Virus record (IMG/VR): IMGVR_UViG_3300048121_001678
Location: 1-64,000 of that record
DNA length: 64,000 nucleotides
Direction: 5' to 3' (one strand)
Shown here in pieces: positions 11,494 through 18,453 of this stretch. The notes under the pieces were generated by a model. The model was not told where the DNA came from. It did not search any database and worked only from the letters and a program-made list of their open reading frames with translations. Position numbers and translations under genes: made by a program. Numbering within the stretch: the stretch's first letter is position 1; each line of letters opens with the position of its first letter.

Positions 11494-12435
11494 TTAATTT
11501 GATAGAGGTGCTTTAATTGTTGGGTGTGATTGATAACCTCTAATCTCATAATCAAACTCACCGTTTAATACATCAACATTGGATAACTCAATCGTTGGTA
11601 AATCATATGACATTCTTCCACATTGTTCGTTCGCTTGGTCAATGTGATTCTTATATAAGTGAGTATCACCTAAGTTCCCCACCAACTCACCTGGTTGATA
11701 ACCTGTCTCCTCACATAACAACAATAGTAATGTTCCATATGATGCAATGTTGAATGGTAAACCTAAGAAGGTGTCAACTGAACGTTGATTCCACATTAGG
11801 GATAGTTTACCTTCAGACACATAACATTGAAATCCATAATGACATGGAGGTAGTACAACCTCGTCCAACTCACCAACATTCCAAGCTGATACCATATGTC
11901 TACGAGAATTAGGATTTTCTTTTAGACCTTTTATTAAGTTTTGAATTTGGTCAATGTACTTAGTACCTTCAACATATGTATCTTCACCCGATAATGGGTC
12001 TTTGAGAGTAGTCTTAATAAGTGATTCAGTTTTCCATTCTCTCCATTGTTTACCATAGATTGGACCCAACTCACCCCACATCTCAGCAAATCTATCCTGA
12101 GTCTTAATCTTCTGAATGAATGACTTAGGACCCATAGCTAATGTTCCCTTGTCTTCTTTGTATCTTTTATAAGCATCACCATTCCAAATGTTACAATCAT
12201 TATCCACCAAATACTTAATGTTGGTATCACCTTTGAGGAACCACTTCAGTTCGGTCATCATGGTCTTAACCGCCATCTTCTTTGTGGTTAACAAAGGAAA
12301 CCCCTCACTCATATCATGACGTATCTGACGACCAAAGACCGATACTGTACCAGTACCTGTACGGTCATCTTTCTCAACACCATTGGTCATGATGTCTTTT
12401 AATAATTCTAAGTAATCTTTATCTAATTTATTCAT
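11494..12435 (-). CDS. thyA: Thymidylate synthase
   Basis: Motifs DDRTGTGT, GFPLLTTKK, ELKWFLKG, LGPIYGKQWR, LPPCH, QRSVDTFLGLPFNIASY and GDTHLY. Confidence 0.97.
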   Translation of the reverse strand: MNKLDKDYLELLKDIMTNGVEKDDRTGTGTVSVFGRQIRHDMSEGFPLLTTKKMAVKTMMTELKWFLKGDTNIKYLVDNDCNIWNGDAYKRYKEDKGTLAMGPKSFIQKIKTQDRFAEMWGELGPIYGKQWREWKTESLIKTTLKDPLSGEDTYVEGTKYIDQIQNLIKGLKENPNSRRHMVSAWNVGELDEVVLPPCHYGFQCYVSEGKLSLMWNQRSVDTFLGLPFNIASYGTLLLLLCEETGYQPGELVGNLGDTHLYKNHIDQANEQCGRMSYDLPTIELSNVDVLNGEFDYEIRGYQSHPTIKAPLSN

Positions 12436-12637
12436 GTGTATATACTATCATAGTATTATTGATAGGAAATCTATAGATAGGTGCGTTTTTTTCATTTGAT
12501 TGTCTTTGGAGGACTTCGTAATACCCATTATAGTCTTTAATAGTCATCACATTTTCTTTAGTTTCTGATGGTCCACTACCATCGCTGAACACAACCGACA
12601 TTGTGTGTTCTTTTGTGTTAAATCTCAGTACATTCAT
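12428..12637 (-). CDS. Hypothetical protein
   Basis: 69-aa ORF overlapping the thyA start. Confidence 0.65.
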   Translation of the reverse strand: MNVLRFNTKEHTMSVVFSDGSGPSETKENVMTIKDYNGYYEVLQRQSNEKNAPIYRFPINNTMIVYTHE

Positions 12638-12725
12638 TTGTTATTGTAATTATAAGGTTATAGGGCAATAAAAAACCCCTTCGTCTATTATAACAAAGGG
12701 GCAGTTAAAAATCAATTATTAAAGA

Positions 12726-13025
12726 CTATTTTCCAATAACTAAATCAGAGTAGTCTAATTTTTCCATACCTGTTAATTCTTCCTCAACCTCATCATACAT
12801 ATAAGCTTTAACTACGGCAACTACGCCCTGTTCAGCTTGAGCCAATTTACTTTCCATCCAATCTTCGATTTGCTCTCCGTCTTCCATCATTTCCCACATC
12901 TTATATGCTAATGTGGCGATGGTGAATAGTTGTTGTTTAGCCATATACGACCCGTCATGTTTTCCTTCTGTCAAGGAAGCTGTCAACCTTTCCAATTGTG
13001 CTTCTGTAAGAATAATTTGTCCCAT
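12726..13025 (-). CDS. Hypothetical protein, probably virion-associated (start re-set to MGQIILTE)
   Basis: TATTTAT at 13045-13051 lies inside the longer ORF call, which favours the downstream ATG; IILTEAQL leader. Confidence 0.7.
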   Translation of the reverse strand: MGQIILTEAQLERLTASLTEGKHDGSYMAKQQLFTIATLAYKMWEMMEDGEQIEDWMESKLAQAEQGVVAVVKAYMYDEVEEELTGMEKLDYSDLVIGK

Positions 13026-13154
13026 ATTTTGTTTACCTTTGTTTATAAATATCACGTAATTAAAAAAGGTGAGGATTACTCCCCACCTTTTTGAGGCCGA
13101 CCTGGCTAATAGTCGTCGGCAACTCCACCACCCTATTTCATCTAATAGGGAAAT

Positions 13155-13664
13155 CTATTCCTTAACTGATGAGTTTAACCAATCAATCACTTCTTCATCT
13201 AGTAGACTTTCTTCAGAGTTAGATAACCCCCAAATACTACCATCGATATTAATTAAATATTTAAAGAAATTCCATTTAGTTTCAAAATCATAACCATATT
13301 TTGATGAACCTTCATTAGTATATTGCAACCAATGCCAAATATCTGAATCTTTAAGAATTACTTTATCCATTAAATAAACATTCGAATGTTCTAAGACCCC
13401 ATACCCATCACAAAAGGTCTTTATTTCATCAATGGTTCCAGGTTCTTGTCCTCCAAAATCATTAGATGGATACAACCATACCGTAACTTTATCCTTATCA
13501 ACAGTTTCTAAGAACTGTTTGAGGTCTTTGTAGTTATTATCCGTATATCCACACTCTGAGGCCACATTGATGACTATGTGTCTCGTGTTTAAAATTTTGG
13601 GGTGAATCATTTCACCACTTTCGGTGATGAGAATCCTATCGTAAAAGTTAGTTATACCTTCCAT
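13155..13664 (-). CDS. Glutathione peroxidase family protein (Cys-type)
   Basis: Motifs VINVASECGYT, YPSNDFGGQEPG and KWNFFKYLIN. Confidence 0.9.
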   Translation of the reverse strand: MEGITNFYDRILITESGEMIHPKILNTRHIVINVASECGYTDNNYKDLKQFLETVDKDKVTVWLYPSNDFGGQEPGTIDEIKTFCDGYGVLEHSNVYLMDKVILKDSDIWHWLQYTNEGSSKYGYDFETKWNFFKYLINIDGSIWGLSNSEESLLDEEVIDWLNSSVKE

Positions 13665-13846
13665 TTATTCAATAAGTTATTTATTTCATGAGAGTACGCT
13701 TGATGTACCGTTTTACATTCTCGTATACCATACGCATTTCCATCAGTAGTGTAAATAACAACGTCATCTTTAAACCTCTCAATTTCCTGAATTTCTTTTA
13801 ATTCTTTTGTTTCAGGTATCACAACCATATCTCCAACTTTATACAT
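13652..13846 (-). CDS. Hypothetical protein
   Basis: 64-aa ORF coupled to its neighbours. Confidence 0.65.
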   Translation of the reverse strand: MYKVGDMVVIPETKELKEIQEIERFKDDVVIYTTDGNAYGIRECKTVHQAYSHEINNLLNKWKV

Positions 13847-14121
13847 TATCCCTCCATCTTAGATTTATGAATTGCATATCCACCCAAAGTCAATTCCTCT
13901 TGAGGTTTCACATTACCCAAAATAATAGATTGACTAAGTAAATCATAAGGAATATGTACTAAGAAGTCTCGACCATTGAAGAATGATAGGTCCTGCTTTA
14001 ATTCAATACAAGAATGTACCATCTGTAAAAACAACTTAAACTGAACCTCATCAGAGTAGTAGTCATTAAGCAGGTTTCCGAATTGTGGGTGAATGATTTT
14101 TATGTTTTTCTCTAATACCAT
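13846..14121 (-). CDS. Hypothetical protein
   Basis: 91-aa ORF; TATATTTG at 14142-14149 on the minus strand. Confidence 0.7.
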   Translation of the reverse strand: MVLEKNIKIIHPQFGNLLNDYYSDEVQFKLFLQMVHSCIELKQDLSFFNGRDFLVHIPYDLLSQSIILGNVKPQEELTLGGYAIHKSKMEG

Positions 14122-14182
14122 ATTTATTTCTTTTGTATATACAAATATAATAAATATATTTCACTATAACAACTATAGGCAT

Positions 14183-14212
14183 AAAAAAACCTCGGTGGGT
14201 TAACACCGAGGT
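14183..14212 (-). terminator. Intrinsic terminator closing the large ncRNA
   Basis: Minus-strand ACCUCGGUG-UUAACC-CACCGAGGU stem followed by a U-tract. Confidence 0.85.
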
Positions 14213-14236
14213 CAAGGAAGGTATATGTGGTATAGA

Positions 14237-15050
14237 ACGCTGAGATTACACGTTTATGTGACTTGTCTTTAATGAGATTACCCTATATCGGTTGCCCACT
14301 TATCCACTATCGTTTCCGAAAGTATCAAGTCAGTGTCGGTTACTTACGTTAACCACTCGTATTCGTCAATAACTACTCAACCACTACTATATTCTGTTAA
14401 ACCTTGCGAGTTCACTAAGGGATGGCCGTCCCAACAGGTATTTCGTAATCGACATTGAATGACTTGCCGTCAATACAATGACTCCGTTAGTTTCTACTCG
14501 GAGTGTTAGACACCTTTCGTTATTAACGCCTGAAGACTTTTGCTTTGTATCTATTTTTAAAATAGTAGCAAAATGTGGATTTAGGAAAGATGTGCTTCAG
14601 GAGAAGGTTCGTTCCTTTTGAGAACAAAATGCTTCACACCTCTCTGTAAGTCTGTCAACTTACGGTACTTCAGGACTTCGTTGATTTAATCACCTCGGAA
14701 ACCCGTCGTACTGGTACCCAGCCCTACAACACCTGACAGGATGTGTCGAACCGTCACCTGTAACTTTTCCTATTGATGTCACCATCTCAACTCTGATATT
14801 CCACGGACTCAGAGTAACCTCTTCCCCCTAGCAGTTGCCCTCGGGGAATCGGCCGTAGCCACTTTGTTTAGTTGTCAGAATACACTTGTACTCTGCGAAC
14901 TTCCAATAGATACTACTCTACTTTCCGTCCCTTTAGTCCCCTCACGGGGTTTATCTAACGACGCTAAACCGCCGAGTGTTGATTAAACTTTCTTTTATTT
15001 TGGAAAGGACGTCCTCCTAAAAGGACATCAAAAGTCCGTAATAATCAACC
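14237..15050 (-). ncRNA. Large structured ncRNA, GOLLD-like (~815 nt)
   Basis: No ORF of 60 aa or more and higher GC than the flanks. Many stems (14978-14985/15042-15049, 14646-14663, 14481-14504, 14529-14535/14595-14601) and GCAA tetraloops. The 3' motifs GAGUAGUU (14371-14378), UUAACGUAAG (14343-14352) and GUAAUCUCAG (14240-14249) match GOLLD as I recall it. Has its own promoter and terminator. Confidence 0.7.
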
Positions 15051-15092
15051 TCTAATATTTCAAAGAACTTTTCTTTTAACTTTTTACTCCTA

Positions 15093-15173
15093 CAAATCTA
15101 ATACTTTAATTTTAGACTGTCAAATAAACTTTTAAGAATTTCTGATTTTTTTCAGTAGGGTAAGATATAAATA
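15093..15173 (-). promoter_or_regulatory. Candidate promoters of the large ncRNA
   Basis: TAGATTTG (Bacteroidota TAnnTTTG type) at 15093-15100 and TATTTAT at 15167-15173. Confidence 0.5.
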
Positions 15174-15258
15174 TTACCGTTTCACTCAAAAGTTATACGA
15201 AGATACTAAAAATTTCATCTCCGTCAAGTATTTTTTTGTTTTTTTTAGTAATTTGACA

Positions 15259-15474
15259 TTAAATGGAAACCCCATTCACATCAAATTCGGATTTTAAAGC
15301 TTCCAACTTATCTTTTGCAGTTGCCATTTTGTCAACCATTTCGTCCATCTCCTCTAAATGTTGTGGGTGTTCACCAATCCCAACTGAGTTATGGAAATAC
15401 ACATTTAGTGTTGCCTTTGCAGCTATTAAATCTGCTTCATACTTTTTTACTAACGCTTGATACATTAAATTCAT
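15259..15474 (-). CDS. Hypothetical conserved phage protein
   Basis: 71 aa; YFHNSVGIGEHPQHLEEMD motif typical of T4-like phage small proteins. Confidence 0.7.
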   Translation of the reverse strand: MNLMYQALVKKYEADLIAAKATLNVYFHNSVGIGEHPQHLEEMDEMVDKMATAKDKLEALKSEFDVNGVSI

Positions 15475-15878
15475 TTTAAAATAATTTTTAATAGTTTATT
15501 AAATTGTTCTGTCATTGGTGAAGGTAATTCATTTTTACCAAAATATCCACACTCAGTATGTTCATCTCCATCTTTCGCAGTTGTTAAGTTAGGGTGAATC
15601 TCTTCATCACAATCATAAAGAAAACAGTACATTTCACCTTTAATTTTTGAACCATCTCTGTTTGTTCTCTTAATAAGACCACAGAACTCAGGTTCATCAA
15701 TTAATTTAAAATCAGTTTCTTCATAAAATTCTCTCATCGCACCTAACAAAGGACTTTCACCCTCTTCAATACTTCCTGCTGGACATGACCAGTGACCAGG
15801 TAATGGCCCTTCATTATTCCGTTTACATAATAATACTTTATTATCACATCTAACTATAATACCTCCGTATTTTTTCAT
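15471..15878 (-). CDS. Nudix hydrolase
   Basis: Nudix box GSIEEGESPLLGAMREFYEETD. Confidence 0.9.
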   Translation of the reverse strand: MKKYGGIIVRCDNKVLLCKRNNEGPLPGHWSCPAGSIEEGESPLLGAMREFYEETDFKLIDEPEFCGLIKRTNRDGSKIKGEMYCFLYDCDEEIHPNLTTAKDGDEHTECGYFGKNELPSPMTEQFNKLLKIILK

Positions 15879-15906
15879 ATTATATAATCTTCATATATTT
15901 ATTACT

Positions 15907-16263
15907 ATGAAGATAACTATAGGAGATAATATTATTAAAGTCAAACTTTGCGTGACAAAAGATTCAATAATTAAAGGAATGCAAGGTCAAAAGTTTAATG
16001 ATGAGTTCCAAGGTATGTATTTCTTAATGCCAAGTAAAGGTGAACAATCTTTTTGGATGTACGATTGTATAATACCTTTAGATATTATATTCATCAATGG
16101 TGATGATATTGACACCATTCACGAAAATTGTCCAATATGTACTAATGAGTTGGAATGTGAATCCTATACGGGTTATGGTGACAAGGTATTAGAATTACCA
16201 GCAGGTATGTCAAAACAACTTGGTATAAAAAAAGGAGACAATGTCTCCTTCTCTTTATTTTAA
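15907..16263 (+). CDS. DUF192 family protein
   Basis: GMYF, SFWMYDCIIPLDIIFI and VLELPAG motifs. Confidence 0.85.
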   Translation: MKITIGDNIIKVKLCVTKDSIIKGMQGQKFNDEFQGMYFLMPSKGEQSFWMYDCIIPLDIIFINGDDIDTIHENCPICTNELECESYTGYGDKVLELPAGMSKQLGIKKGDNVSFSLF

Positions 16264-18453
16264 TTGACTAAGTACTGTTGAGGTTTCAATTCCAACAATG
16301 CCGTCATCCTCAATCTTATTATCTTTTTGAACCTTTTTAATCGACTCTCTTGTTTTTGACCCAAAACGACCGTCAACACCGTCTTTATTCGGACCAAAGT
16401 CTCCAAGGTCATAACCATTATCCACTAATATCTGCTGAATCTCTTCAACACCTTTACCTCTTGAACCTAAAGATATTAACTCACTATTGTCACCATTACT
16501 AATAATATCTGCAATTGTTAAATCTTGTTTTACGACATTTTTTTCTTTCTTATATTCATCGTCTTTAAGTTCTATGTTGGAGACGTGTAAATGATGCTTA
16601 TGACTACCATCTGGCATAAACCATAGAACCGCTCTTTTGTGTTTACCTTCACTATTTCTATTATAACCTAATGACTCTAATGCCGAACATAATCTATCAC
16701 CCGCACTAATAAAACCTTCTCTGTTATTTCTATACGATGAAAGTTTTTTCTCATTAGGGTTATTTAAGTCTTGAAGTTTCGAAATATCTATAGCCCTTTC
16801 AATATGGTGTCTACTTACTTTACCTCCTTTAGTATTCTTACCATGACCCGTTTTAGCCCAGCTTAGTTCTGCATTTACATTTGCAATTTCAGCGGCCACA
16901 CCAATATCATTAATTAGTTCTTCAGGTAAATAATCATTCTTCGCCCTTCTACTAACAAATAAGTTAGGTGAAATTTCATCACCTACCCTCATCATATTTT
17001 CTGTTACTATTTTTTTAGTTTTTTTTTTAAAAGACTCTTTCAAATTTTTTGAACCCTCAATCTTTTCTTTAAGCTTTCTATAGAATTCTTCTCCAATCAT
17101 CTTAGAGAATTTAACGTATGGTGCATCACCTGAATCTTTATTGTATTTGTACTTACCTTGTGGTGGTCTCTTACTCCTACCGAAATAATTAAGTGCAGCA
17201 ATGTTAGTAATACATTTGTGACCACCTGAGTTAGCCTGTATCATTTCCCAAGCCGGAACACCTAAACCATCTAATAAACTCATCTCATCGTCAGTTAACT
17301 TACTGAATGGTTTATCCATTATCGCCTTTAAGTTTTCCATATACTTTTCTCCACCTTCCATAGACTTAATCTTATCACCGTAGAATGCTTCTAAATCTGC
17401 GTTTGTAAAACCTACAGACTCCTCACCAAAACTCTTTGATGACTCAGAAATCCATTTGATTGTTGATAATGGTATAATCTTTTCTCTTAGTTTAGATTCC
17501 CACTTACCCAATACTTCCTGTGCGATATCACCTAAGTTAACACCTTTAAGTTCTCTCTCACCCTTAAAAGGATTACAAGACGCTTGTACCAATCCCATCG
17601 GCCAAACCGTAATAAGGAAATCAGCATCGGGATGTAATTTAAATGGTGTATACCTATCGTATGAACCTGGTTTAAACATTCTACCACCACCGTATTGATA
17701 AAGAATACCATCTTTATAACTTAACTTAGGGTCCTTACTTCTTTGGTCAACATAGTCCTCTTGATTCGCAGACATCATCAACGCATTTGCATAGTTTTCT
17801 CTATCAGCTATTCTCCTAATATTTTGGAATATGTTTAATAAGGATGGTTTTGAAGTCATAACTAACTCCTCCATAAAACCTGGTTTGTTTTTATAAGCCA
17901 ACATAAGTTTGTTTGCCGCCAAACCTAACGCCATCTTATTTTTCTGTAGTGATTTGTCTTTATCTAACTTAAAGATAAAGTTCATAATGTCCTGTGGCTT
18001 TAAACCATACTTAGCAAAGTCGGCAGAATCAACCGTTGATATTAATCTAATGTCATCAGCAGTAAAAATATCTTTAGGTGACATTATCTGTGATAGTGTT
18101 TCAACATTTGAACGTGAAGACCTAAATGAGGTTGATGTATCACCCTCAACTCCACTCTGTGAATCGTGGTGGTCAGTGTGAACAACAAACATTGGCTTTC
18201 CATGTGCAAAATCAACTAACACTGGCATTGTATCTCCTTGAGCATCTTGTTTCTTCACTGCAAATTCCTTATCACCATATTGGATAATCTCACTATCAAC
18301 AACTTTAATACCGTTATTTTCTAAATAGTTCTTCATTGCTAATGCAGTTGTAACCCCATCTAAATCCTGATGAAAGTATATTTTAGCCTTTTTATATCTC
18401 TTGGATAGGTCATTTATATTACGTAGACCAGACTCGTTAATTAACTTTTTCAT
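16255..18453 (-). CDS. Fusion: DHH-family phosphoesterase + M15-like peptidase + peptidoglycan-binding domain
   Basis: HQDLDG, VDFAH, TDHHD and SGGH (DHH/DHHA1); SRH...AIDI...HHLHVS (M15-like); LGSRGKGVEEIQQIL...DGRFGSKT...DDGIVGIET (PG-binding). Confidence 0.7.
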   Translation of the reverse strand: MKKLINESGLRNINDLSKRYKKAKIYFHQDLDGVTTALAMKNYLENNGIKVVDSEIIQYGDKEFAVKKQDAQGDTMPVLVDFAHGKPMFVVHTDHHDSQSGVEGDTSTSFRSSRSNVETLSQIMSPKDIFTADDIRLISTVDSADFAKYGLKPQDIMNFIFKLDKDKSLQKNKMALGLAANKLMLAYKNKPGFMEELVMTSKPSLLNIFQNIRRIADRENYANALMMSANQEDYVDQRSKDPKLSYKDGILYQYGGGRMFKPGSYDRYTPFKLHPDADFLITVWPMGLVQASCNPFKGERELKGVNLGDIAQEVLGKWESKLREKIIPLSTIKWISESSKSFGEESVGFTNADLEAFYGDKIKSMEGGEKYMENLKAIMDKPFSKLTDDEMSLLDGLGVPAWEMIQANSGGHKCITNIAALNYFGRSKRPPQGKYKYNKDSGDAPYVKFSKMIGEEFYRKLKEKIEGSKNLKESFKKKTKKIVTENMMRVGDEISPNLFVSRRAKNDYLPEELINDIGVAAEIANVNAELSWAKTGHGKNTKGGKVSRHHIERAIDISKLQDLNNPNEKKLSSYRNNREGFISAGDRLCSALESLGYNRNSEGKHKRAVLWFMPDGSHKHHLHVSNIELKDDEYKKEKNVVKQDLTIADIISNGDNSELISLGSRGKGVEEIQQILVDNGYDLGDFGPNKDGVDGRFGSKTRESIKKVQKDNKIEDDGIVGIETSTVLSQLK

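What the first reader, a model, noticed from the sequence alone, without database searches (positions are those of the whole stretch)
14237..15050. GOLLD-like giant structured RNA as an independent transcription unit with no neighbouring tRNA
Seen: about 815 nt without coding potential and GC-richer than the flanks, with dense short helices and GCAA tetraloops. It has upstream promoter motifs of both classes (15093-15100 and 15167-15173) and a strong terminator (14183-14212). An AU-rich hairpin domain at 14529-14601 is closed by CCUGAAG/CUUCAGG, and a second copy at 14668-14674 offers an alternative pairing. Established: GOLLD RNAs are large phage-associated ncRNAs of unknown function, usually near tRNA genes, reported to form RNA-only oligomeric cages. 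Inference: this is a Bacteroidota jumbo-phage GOLLD variant, or a new ornate RNA class, possibly with a switchable domain.
Basis: partly seen in the sequence, partly recalled or inferred. Interest (0 to 1): 0.75.

Follow-up and report, generated by a model that had tools for sequence, protein, structure and literature searches.

The report
GOLLD cage RNA of jumbo phage
This non-coding stretch is a genuine GOLLD RNA, a known giant phage RNA that builds hollow RNA-only cages, carried here by a 297-kb marine phage with its own promoters and terminator and made in very large amounts in nature; what it does is still unknown.

Summary
Window 14644-14237 (minus strand) matches Rfam GOLLD (RF02032) over the whole model at 295 bits (cut-off 150, E 2e-83). 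The 330 nt upstream (14975-14645) is a second structured domain, conserved with many compensatory changes in 20 related phage contigs. Its first two thirds are homologous to the 5' domain of canonical GOLLDs; its last third is specific to this clade. The genome is a 297-kb virus record, and several indirect lines point to a Bacteroidota host. The nearest tRNA is about 43 kb away. The RNA has a conserved Bacteroidota-type promoter, a second one further upstream, a phage-type motif (TATTTATA) between them, a conserved leader box and a covarying terminator. In four metatranscriptomes, contigs cover only about 14216-15034. Where flanking genes are detected, the RNA is about 100-fold deeper. The proposed alternative pairing with the second CCUGAAG is not conserved, so the switch idea fails. 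A hairpin loop that forms a self-kissing contact in the solved cage keeps a covarying palindrome here (GGCC), which argues for self-assembly. Verdict: a new member of a known family, with a tRNA-free setting. Its function is unknown.

The parts
15198..15227 (-). Distal host-type promoter-like site: TTGACG (15227-15222), then TATCTTCG (15205-15198). The second element is one mismatch from TAnnTTTG here and exact in several relatives.
   Evidence: Consensus scan. The same element sits at the same place in most of 20 relatives. Function is inferred.
15166..15173 (-). Phage-type promoter-like motif TATTTATA.
   Evidence: It is the most strand-biased 8-mer upstream of ORFs in this genome: 46 sense against 20 antisense among 276 ORFs. 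39 of 51 occurrences lie 10-29 nt before the ATG. It is present 52-74 nt upstream of the -7 box in 19 of 20 relatives. Function is inferred.
15093..15124 (-). Proximal Bacteroidota-type promoter: -33 TTTG (15124-15121), a 20-nt spacer, then -7 TAGATTTG (15100-15093). The predicted start is near 15086.
   Evidence: TAnnTTTG is invariant in 21 of 21 aligned homologues and the -33 TTTG is nearly so. A sigma-70-like scan also scores the site 10 of 12. The start site is not mapped.
15054..15069 (-). Conserved leader box AGUUCUUUGAAAUAUU, a possible 5'-processing signal.
   Evidence: Its core GUUCUUUGAA is invariant in 20 of 21 homologues even though its distance from the promoter varies. The same box lies between tRNA-Met and the GOLLD 5' domain in the 635-kb phage LR745206.1 (L161 990-1005). 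RNA-seq contigs begin downstream of it, at about 15023-15034. The processing role is inferred.
15008..15029 (-). Variable 5' hairpin (GAUGUCC / GGACGUC) ahead of the conserved core.
   Evidence: The sequence itself. The hairpin is kept with different letters in the closer relatives. It lies inside the RNA-seq contigs.
14645..14975 (-). GOLLD 5' domain. Blocks A (14975-14863) and B (14865-14757) are homologous to canonical GOLLD 5' domains. Block C (14759-14645) is specific to this clade.
   Evidence: 98-99% of cells are paired, 11-13 pairs per block change on both sides, and 0 of 500 shuffles reach the covariation score. The single-sequence fold was tested on the alignment. Covariance models of A and B hit the huge-phage GOLLDs colinearly (E 1e-5 to 1e-8). 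The model of C does not.
14237..14644 (-). GOLLD conserved 3' domain.
   Evidence: Rfam RF02032: 295.4 bits (cut-off 150), model positions 1-416 of 416, E 1.8e-83. It is the only copy in the genome.
14595..14601 (-). 5' strand (CCUGAAG) of the helix that closes the variable linker. It sits in the internal loop of the first 3'-domain hairpin.
   Evidence: It pairs with 14535-14529 in 21 of 21 homologues at all 7 pairs, and two positions covary. The same helix is spelt with other letters in L161, L162, env-38 and the Rfam consensus.
14529..14535 (-). 3' strand (CUUCAGG) of the linker-closing helix.
14536..14584 (-). Variable AU-rich linker, which folds as a two-tier hairpin. It holds no tRNA.
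   Evidence: It varies in sequence and length (45-71 nt), yet a hairpin forms in nearly all 21 homologues, each time with different inner-stem letters. ARAGORN finds no tRNA.
14419..14432 (-). Hairpin whose 6-nt loop CGGCCA (14428-14423) carries the palindrome GGCC. It appears equivalent to loop L21a of the solved GOLLD cage.
   Evidence: Seven loop variants occur in 59 loci. Loop positions 2 and 5 covary (G-C, U-A, A-U, G.U) around a fixed central GC. One variant, in 5 loci, breaks the rule. The huge-phage copies have UCGA. This matches the GC/CG palindrome reported for the self-kissing bridge B8 (PMC12286853).
14668..14674 (-). It is not a conserved switch element.
   Evidence: A full copy exists in 3 of 21 homologues. 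The last two proposed pairs are broken in 13-16 of 21. It does not follow its supposed partner's covariation. It is part of a covarying 5'-domain helix.
14183..14213 (-). Intrinsic terminator: a 10-bp stem, a 6-nt loop and T7.
   Evidence: Scan. The stem is kept by compensatory changes at three or more pairs, and the T-run is invariant in 21 homologues.

Best explanation
The stretch is the gene of a GOLLD RNA on the minus strand of a 297-kb jumbo phage that probably infects marine Bacteroidota. Shown: it has the canonical 3' domain (14644-14237), the linker-closing pseudoknot helix and a variable AU-rich linker. It also has a 330-nt 5' domain whose first two thirds are homologous to canonical GOLLD 5' domains and whose last third is remodelled and about 100 nt shorter. 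Shown: it sits apart from any tRNA. It lies behind conserved promoter elements and in front of a covarying intrinsic terminator. In natural RNA samples it is present as a discrete stretch of about 0.8 kb, roughly 100 times deeper than the neighbouring genes. Inferred: host RNA polymerase starts at the TTTG/TAnnTTTG promoters early in infection, and the phage's own transcription system uses the TATTTATA motif later. Inferred: the leader is trimmed near the conserved box AGUUCUUUGAAAUAUU. Inferred: the mature RNA, like the two solved GOLLDs, assembles with copies of itself into a closed RNA-only cage, with 3' domains forming the ring, 5' domains forming the caps and the linker hairpin pointing inward. 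One contact between the half-shells would be the self-complementary GGCC loop at 14427-14424. The role of the cage during infection is not known. The most likely kind of role is holding or shielding some component of the host's or the phage's translation machinery.
For: Identity: RF02032 scores 295.4 bits over the full model, is the only Rfam family above threshold in the window, and has a single copy in the genome. Conservation: 54 related loci carry a full-length homologue, which reduce to 21 sequences at under 97% identity. RNAalifold gives 203 pairs, 83 of them with compensatory changes. The 5' blocks are 98-99% paired and 0 of 500 shuffles reach the covariation score. 5'-domain homology: models R2 and R1 hit the tRNA-flanked GOLLDs of LR745206.1 and LR756502.1 colinearly, just upstream of their Rfam matches. 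Those copies share long strings with env-38, the GOLLD whose cage was solved. Linker helix: 7 of 7 pairs are kept in 21 of 21 homologues with two covarying positions, and the helix is spelt differently in L161, L162 and env-38. Transcription unit: the -7 box is invariant, the terminator covaries and the phage motif is conserved. Expression: 14 declared RNA runs hold 63-83% of the sampled words of the RNA. Only 2 hold more than 20% of an equally long upstream coding stretch. Contigs in four metatranscriptomes from four studies span only 14216/14255/14267 to 15023/15034. In run X3 the depth is 860-1325 against 5-10 in the flanks. Self-assembly: the palindrome covaries in the loop mapped to L21a. 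Cages of 14 and 12 copies were solved for env-38 and Streptococcus agalactiae GOLLD (PMC12286853; PMC12990946).
Against: No structure or oligomer measurement exists for this RNA. Its 5' domain lacks about 100 nt of the canonical one, including the module with the conserved GAAA loop, so the cap may be built differently. One palindrome variant (UAGCAA, 5 loci) breaks the rule. The RNA evidence comes from assembled contigs, which carry no strand, no true ends and only coarse depth. One X3 contig (14786-15742) joins the 5' part to the upstream genes, so some read-through is possible. TAnnTTTG is not enriched upstream of genes genome-wide (37 against 29 +/- 5), so host-type promoters are at best a minority class in this phage. 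My assignment of helix and loop names rests on the papers' text and the Rfam consensus, not on their figures. In a Lactobacillus brevis prophage, GOLLD was reported to be dispensable for phage production (cited in PMC7567579), so any role may be conditional.
Confidence: 0.8

Rival explanations
1. A GOLLD that works as a monomer or as a protein- or ribosome-bound scaffold in the cell. On this view the cage is not the functional form for this shortened variant.
For: The 5' domain is about 100 nt shorter and its last third has no detectable homology to canonical GOLLD. Pull-downs of GOLLD with ribosomes are mentioned in PMC12286853. Nothing has been measured for this RNA.
Against: The palindromic loop covaries at two loop positions only two bases apart. 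This is hard to explain by pairing within one chain. Both solved full-length GOLLDs form cages despite different 5' domains.
Confidence: 0.15
2. A switchable domain. The second CCUGAAG (14674-14668) would compete with the first for CUUCAGG, toggling the linker hairpin between two states.
For: In this one genome the two 7-mers are identical.
Against: A full copy exists in only 3 of 21 homologues. The two outer pairs are broken in 13-16 of 21. Where the partner changes to CUUCGAG, the second copy does not follow, giving C-A mismatches. The segment belongs to a 5'-domain helix that covaries itself.
Confidence: 0.03
3. A new ornate RNA class that merely resembles GOLLD.
For: The Rfam model does not cover 14645-15050, and no other Rfam family hits that part.
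Against: The Rfam model covers only the 3' domain by design. That domain matches in full. 5' blocks A and B match canonical-type GOLLD 5' domains.
Confidence: 0.01
4. A long untranslated leader or trailer of the neighbouring genes, or a stretch holding small proteins, rather than a free RNA.
For: One metatranscriptome contig runs from the 5' part into the upstream 71-aa and NUDIX genes. Five ORFs of 31-47 aa lie inside the region.
Against: Depth falls about 100-fold on both sides. Three of four runs have no flank signal at all. It has its own conserved promoter and terminator. Substitutions follow base-pairing, not codons.
Confidence: 0.02

Closest known systems
GOLLD env-38 (marine metagenome; 14-copy cage, PDB 9MEE; Kretsch et al. 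2025, PMC12286853)
   Same: It has the same 3' domain architecture (Rfam model). It has the same linker-closing helix, spelt GAUAGAC/GUCUAUC there and CCUGAAG/CUUCAGG here. It has the same opening of the 5' domain: hairpin, AAUAA-type junction, GNRA-type hairpin, UAAAG. The loop I map to L21a is palindromic in both. Both are marine.
   Different: env-38 lies downstream of a tRNA-Met, whereas this one is about 43 kb from any tRNA and has its own promoters and terminator. From first 5'-domain hairpin to last 3'-domain hairpin this RNA is about 740 nt (14975-14237), against 833 nt for env-38. The last third of its 5' domain is remodelled and lacks the module with the conserved GAAA loop. Its palindrome is 4 nt (GGCC) rather than a GC dinucleotide. 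The comparison with env-38 is by eye from the published sequence, not a computed alignment.
GOLLD copies found here in the 635-kb and 642-kb 'Mahaphage' genomes LR745206.1 and LR756502.1 (Al-Shayeb et al. 2020)
   Same: Both give full-length Rfam hits (287 and 275 bits). 5' blocks A and B are homologous. LR745206.1 has the same leader box. The phages are distant relatives (39-47% identity over the N-terminal ~470 of the 732-aa protein) and their predicted host phylum is Bacteroidetes.
   Different: Those copies sit inside tRNA arrays, with a tRNA about 100 nt upstream or 10 nt downstream. They have the longer env-38-like 5' domain, and their palindrome is UCGA.
Streptococcus agalactiae GOLLD (12-copy cage, PDB 9L0R; reviewed in PMC12990946)
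   Same: It is another natural GOLLD whose 5' domain lacks several helices of the consensus and which still forms a cage.
   Different: It lacks P21b, whereas this RNA has both hairpins of that region. It is encoded in a bacterial chromosome or prophage of Bacillota. Which helices are missing here was not mapped one by one.
ROOL RNA (RF03087-type ornate phage RNA that forms 6- or 8-copy cages)
   Same: It is a large, phage-associated RNA, often near tRNAs, that forms cages.
   Different: Its sequence and fold are unrelated. No Rfam hit to ROOL appears here even at E up to 1.

Membership tests
GOLLD RNA (Rfam RF02032) | Conserved 3' domain scoring above the curated gathering score | tested here: met
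   295.4 bits against 150, model positions 1-416 of 416, E 1.8e-83; repeated.
GOLLD RNA (Rfam RF02032) | Variable linker inside the 3' domain, closed by a helix between the internal loop of the first hairpin and the strand just after the linker | tested here: met
   7 bp are kept in 21 of 21 homologues with two covarying positions. Other spellings occur in L161, L162, env-38 and the Rfam consensus. The linker is 45-71 nt and variable.
GOLLD RNA (Rfam RF02032) | A large structured 5' domain upstream of the 3' domain (known to be the variable half) | tested here: met
   It spans 330 nt. 85 pairs in three blocks are 98-99% paired, with 37 pairs changed on both sides. Blocks A and B hit canonical-type GOLLD 5' domains.
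GOLLD RNA (Rfam RF02032) | Distal part of the 5' domain of the consensus type (the env-38-like helices before the 3' domain) | tested here: not met
   Model R3 of 14759-14645 scores only 6.6 bits (E 0.73) at the expected place in L162 and finds nothing in L161. Those copies have about 220 nt there against 115 nt here. This half is known to vary, so the failure does not exclude membership.
GOLLD RNA (Rfam RF02032) | Phage or prophage location | tested here: met
   A 297-kb virus record, 99% complete by CheckV. All homologues lie on viral contigs.
GOLLD RNA (Rfam RF02032) | Neighbouring or embedded tRNA genes (frequent, not obligatory) | tested here: not met
   No tRNA occurs in the 64-kb window or in 25 relatives' loci. 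The nearest is about 43 kb away round the circle.
GOLLD RNA (Rfam RF02032) | Homo-oligomeric RNA-only cage | not testable with these tools
   The only evidence is indirect: a covarying palindrome in the loop mapped to L21a. The L20-to-linker kissing contact could not be judged, because its GCAA/UUGC core barely varies.
GOLLD RNA (Rfam RF02032) | Abundant discrete transcript | tested here: met
   Metatranscriptome contigs are confined to about 14216-15034 at hundreds-fold word depth against 0-10 in the flanks. The difference in run holdings agrees. Strand and exact ends are not shown.
ROOL, OLE and other Rfam families | Covariance-model match | tested here: not met
   No other family matches at the gathering score in the window. 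At E up to 1 on 13900-15400, the only other hit is a sub-threshold RsaF match on the terminator.

The most novel reading that the evidence does not exclude
Its 5' UUUUGCU pairs in cis with the family-wide conserved AGCAAAA just before the closing helix, forming the hairpin seen in nearly all homologues. The same UUGC is also the complement of the GCAA loop that I map to L20, which in the solved cages kisses the linker of a neighbouring chain. Cis hairpin against trans kissing could then gate cage closure. Together with the shortened cap domain and the 4-nt GGCC palindrome, this could give a cage of a different copy number from the known 12- and 14-copy cages.
Probability: 0.12. Interest if true: 0.6.

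Novelty: new member of a known kind. Interest (0 to 1): 0.4.

Why it matters
The function of GOLLD has been an open question since 2009, and the cage structures of 2025 sharpened it without answering it. This locus adds no new kind of RNA, but it does add three useful facts. First, a whole clade of marine jumbo phages, and two of the largest phage genomes known, carry GOLLD. The family therefore reaches phages predicted to infect Bacteroidota, and env-38, the copy whose structure was solved, resembles this lineage. Second, GOLLD can be uncoupled from tRNA genes and given its own promoters and terminator. This argues against models in which its role depends on co-transcription with tRNAs or on an embedded tRNA. 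Third, it is among the most abundant phage transcripts in several natural RNA samples, so it is made in bulk during real infections. The natural series of palindromes (GGCC, UGCA, UAGCUA, UCGA) and the shortened cap domain are ready-made variants for testing how cage contacts and copy number are set.

Tried and rejected
(1) blastn of 14100-15300 against 50,697 GenBank phage records found no match. GOLLDs of cultured phages are too diverged for DNA search. (2) The exact pattern AAAGCAAAAGTCT...GAAAGG in IMG/VR found only 2 contigs. Homologues were instead reached through the neighbouring proteins. (4) env-38 could not be fetched. A 34-nt string from it has no exact match in IMG/VR. The published GOLLD alignment covers only 3' ends, and its gapped rows do not match plain motif strings. 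The env-38 comparison was therefore done by eye. (5) Model R3, for the last third of the 5' domain, gave no significant hit in the huge-phage copies. (6) TAnnTTTG is not enriched upstream of ORFs genome-wide, so it cannot serve as a genome-wide host signal. Only the GOLLD promoter and the lack of Shine-Dalgarno motifs speak for the host. (7) I first read the motif at 15167-15173 as a T4-late-like TATAAATA on the wrong strand. The strand-bias count showed that the sense-strand form TATTTATA is the enriched one. (8) The L20-to-linker kissing pair (GCAA/UUGC) barely varies and is absent in three homologues, so it remains undecided. (9) The sub-threshold RsaF hit on the terminator (26 bits against 60) is a chance match. 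(10) No complex prediction was sent, because the tool gives no verdict for RNA chains.
Full report
OBSERVATION. The stretch is as described. Between 14215 and 15258 no ORF reaches 50 aa on either strand. GC rises to 0.39-0.48 against 0.27-0.33 in the flanks. A 10-bp stem plus T7 at 14213-14183 is the only terminator-like site in 13500-16000. ARAGORN finds no tRNA in the whole window.

IDENTITY. A scan of the window against all 4227 Rfam families at their gathering scores gives one hit. It is GOLLD (RF02032) at 14644-14237 on the minus strand, with 295.4 bits against a cut-off of 150, E 1.8e-83, covering model positions 1-416 of 416. A permissive search of 13900-15400 adds only a sub-threshold chance match on the terminator. 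The Rfam model represents only the conserved 3' half of GOLLD. The literature describes a universally conserved 3' region, a less conserved 5' region and a variable, disordered linker that points into the cage (PMC12286853; PMC12990946).

GENOME AND HOST. The window is the first 64 kb of a single-contig virus record of 297,164 bp. It has 34.4% GC, is 99% complete by CheckV, and its first 20 bases recur about 200 bp before the end. It holds one GOLLD copy. It also holds five tRNAs at 267.8-268.5 kb, a tmRNA and a group I intron. The nearest tRNA is about 43 kb from the GOLLD if the genome is circular. Four indirect lines point to a Bacteroidota host.
- The promoter in front of the RNA has the TTTG-N20-TAnnTTTG form. 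From my own knowledge of the literature, this is typical of the main sigma factor of Bacteroidota.
- Only 9 of 276 crude ORFs have a Shine-Dalgarno-like motif at -20..-4, against 26 in a control position.
- The best database matches of the neighbouring 732-aa protein are the 642-kb and 635-kb uncultured phages LR756502.1 and LR745206.1, at 39-47% identity over its N-terminal ~470 residues. Al-Shayeb et al. predicted the genomes of over 634 kb to replicate in Bacteroidetes (PMC7162821).
- The thymidylate synthase (ThyA) is closest to those same phages and to Flavobacterium phages.
TAnnTTTG is not enriched upstream of genes genome-wide.

HOMOLOGUES AND THE 5' DOMAIN. Searching IMG/VR with the two upstream proteins returned 158 loci. 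nhmmer with 15130-14180 found full-length homologues in 54 of them, always just downstream of the 71-aa gene. These reduce to 36 unique sequences, or 21 at under 97% identity, which are 67-93% identical to the window. On the 21-sequence alignment RNAalifold predicts 203 pairs, 83 of which have compensatory double changes. The 330 nt upstream of the Rfam match (14975-14645) are as well supported as the 3' domain. In three blocks, 98-99% of cells pair and 11-13 pairs per block change on both sides. In each block 0 of 500 shuffles reach the covariation score, and slid controls pair at only 25-43%. I also folded the window sequence alone (z = -3.0) and tested that structure on the alignment. It keeps 84% of cells paired and has 42 compensatory pairs, against 7-17 in slid controls.

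I then asked whether this 5' domain is the GOLLD 5' domain. The two huge-phage genomes also carry full-length GOLLDs (287 and 275 bits). There the RNA lies in tRNA arrays. Their 5' domains share long strings with env-38, the RNA whose 14-copy cage was solved. That comparison is by eye, against the sequence in the paper's supplement. Covariance models of my blocks A (14975-14863) and B (14865-14757) hit both huge-phage loci. The hits are colinear and abutting, directly upstream of the Rfam matches, at 35.2/28.0 and 30.2/25.6 bits with E between 1e-5 and 1e-8. Block C (14759-14645) does not hit; its best score at the expected place is 6.6 bits, E 0.73. The canonical copies have about 220 nt in that place, including a GAAA-loop hairpin, against 115 nt here. 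The RNA is therefore a canonical-type GOLLD whose cap domain is shortened and remodelled in its last third.

THE LINKER AND THE PROPOSED SWITCH. CCYGAAG, which lies in the internal loop of the first 3'-domain hairpin, pairs with CUUCRGG just after the linker. This holds in 21 of 21 homologues at all seven pairs. Two positions covary: U-A with C-G (5 against 16) and C-G with U-A (18 against 3). The same helix is spelt AGGUAAC/GUUACCU in L161, AGGAGAC/GUUUCCU in L162, GAUAGAC/GUCUAUC in env-38 and GGCGGAG/CUUCGUC in the Rfam consensus. From the papers' text I take the linker to be J13/15 and this helix to be P15. That mapping is mine, because the figures are not held. The linker itself is 45-71 nt, 20-37% GC and holds no tRNA. 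It folds as a two-tier hairpin in nearly all homologues, each time with different inner-stem letters. The second CCUGAAG fails as an alternative partner on four counts.
- It is a full copy in only 3 of 21 homologues.
- Its two outer pairs are broken in 13-16 of 21.
- It gives C-A mismatches in the three sequences where the partner reads CUUCGAG.
- It lies within a 5'-domain helix whose neighbouring pair covaries (A-U in 10 sequences, C-G in 10).

A SIGNATURE OF SELF-ASSEMBLY. [quoted passage not shown] They report that its central dinucleotide switches between GC and CG. The hairpin I map to it (14432-14419) has the loop CGGCCA. Across 59 loci there are seven loop variants. Loop positions 2 and 5 covary (G-C, U-A, A-U, G.U) around a fixed GC, giving GGCC, UGCA, UAGCUA and UGGCUA. 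One variant in 5 loci (UAGCAA) breaks the rule, and the huge-phage copies have UCGA. Two loop positions only two bases apart are hard to pair within one chain. The pattern therefore argues for pairing between copies. The other reported base-paired bridge, L20 with the linker, could not be judged.

TRANSCRIPTION UNIT AND EXPRESSION. The upstream architecture is conserved across the clade. It has five elements.
- A distal TTGAC...TAnnTT(T/C)G element lies at 15227-15198.
- The motif TATTTATA lies at 15173-15166.
- The proximal TTTG...TAGATTTG promoter lies at 15124-15093.
- The box AGUUCUUUGAAAUAUU lies at 15069-15054.
- A variable hairpin follows at 15029-15008.
TATTTATA is the most strand-biased 8-mer upstream of ORFs in this genome, at 46 sense against 20 antisense. 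Most copies lie 10-29 nt before the ATG, so it is probably the phage's own promoter type (inference). The leader box keeps its sequence while its distance to the promoter varies. It recurs between tRNA-Met and the GOLLD in LR745206.1. The terminator stem covaries and the T-run is invariant.

Public RNA data agree. Fourteen declared metatranscriptome runs hold 63-83% of the sampled 31-mers of the RNA. Only two hold more than 20% of an equally long upstream coding stretch. I laid four runs from four studies (sediment, two marine, one DNase-treated marsh) on 13200-16400. Contigs span only 14216/14255/14267 to 15023/15034. In X3, where the flanking genes are also detected, word depth is 860-1325 on the RNA against 5-10 downstream and about 4.5 beyond 15768. 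In the other three runs the flanks read zero. DNA contamination would give flat depth, so this signal comes from RNA. Several caveats apply. Contigs carry no strand and only coarse ends. Coding flanks diverge faster between strains, which lowers their chance of being laid. One X3 contig (14786-15742) links the 5' part to the upstream genes, so some read-through is possible. The contig 5' ends lie downstream of the leader box. This is why I suggest trimming there, though it is not shown.

MECHANISM AND RIVALS. The best-supported account is a GOLLD made from its own promoters, trimmed and terminated to about 0.8 kb. It accumulates to high levels and assembles with itself into a cage as the solved GOLLDs do. 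I hold identity at about 0.98, the separate highly expressed unit at about 0.85 and cage formation at about 0.65. The cellular role stays unknown. The tRNA-free arrangement argues against roles that need an embedded or co-transcribed tRNA. They are weighed in their own sections; only the first remains open.

NOVELTY. This is a new member of a known family. I found no paper in the held library that reports GOLLD in jumbo or huge phages or in phages of Bacteroidota. The 2025 alignment lists only short partial hits in Bacteroides and Flavobacterium genomes. Four things go beyond the known picture: the tRNA-independent unit with three promoter elements, the remodelled cap domain, the palindrome series and the abundance in natural RNA samples.

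Noticed in passing
L161 1060-1906 (LR745206.1 about 420434-421280) and L162 1079-1907 (LR756502.1): Two of the largest published phage genomes (635 and 642 kb, Al-Shayeb 2020) each carry a full-length GOLLD (287 and 275 bits) inside a tRNA array. Their 5' domain closely resembles env-38. The paper's main text has no hit for 'structured RNA'; GOLLD itself was not among the terms searched there, and the paper was not returned by my library-wide GOLLD searches.
   Followed up: partly
window 15054-15069; L161 990-1005: The box AGUUCUUUGAAAUAUU is kept in the GOLLD leader across the clade and in a very distant huge phage, where it lies between tRNA-Met and the GOLLD. It may be a processing signal. 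No known motif was matched.
   Followed up: partly
whole genome G000; example at window 15166-15173: TATTTATA on the coding strand, 10-29 nt before start codons, is the most strand-biased upstream 8-mer (46 against 20 among 276 ORFs). It is probably this phage's own promoter type.
   Followed up: partly
genome G000:C1 234463-234852 (L166 664-1053), outside the window: The phage encodes a tmRNA (RF00023, 82.5 bits; ARAGORN tag peptide GETFAKLQAVGLLRTEEVAVA).
   Followed up: partly
genome G000:C1 about 267442-267629 (L167 643-830), outside the window: A group I intron (RF00028, 67.8 bits) lies about 150 nt upstream of the cluster of five tRNA genes (Arg, Met, Thr, Ser, Tyr). What it interrupts was not examined.
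   Followed up: no
whole genome G000: Shine-Dalgarno-like motifs are depleted before start codons: 9 of 276 ORFs, against 26 at a control position. This fits a Bacteroidota host.
   Followed up: partly
genome ends: G000:C1 1-206 and 296958-297164: The first 20 bases recur about 200 bp before the end, but a 30-mer does not. This is an imperfect terminal direct repeat. IMG/VR calls the record linear. It may be a wrap-around of a circular or terminally redundant genome with strain variation.
   Followed up: no
window 11494-18453: The neighbours of the RNA are small metabolic or auxiliary genes. They are thymidylate synthase (12435-11494), a glutathione-peroxidase-like protein (13664-13155), NUDIX (15878-15471), DUF192 (15907-16263, plus strand) and a 732-aa protein with a C-terminal peptidoglycan-binding domain (18453-16255). 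The 71-aa gene directly upstream (15474-15259, phrog_1811, unknown function) always precedes the GOLLD in this clade.
   Followed up: partly
L021, L096, L020 (A1 columns 658-677): Three relatives carry an extra GC-rich mini-hairpin (CCCG...CAGGG) inserted at the tip of the linker hairpin. The linker therefore tolerates insertions, as in GOLLDs that hold a tRNA there.
   Followed up: no
window 14786-15742 (run X3, record 8): One metatranscriptome contig joins the 5' part of the RNA to the upstream 71-aa gene and the end of the NUDIX gene, at mean depth 210. This suggests read-through from upstream, or a start at the distal promoters, in at least one sample.
   Followed up: no
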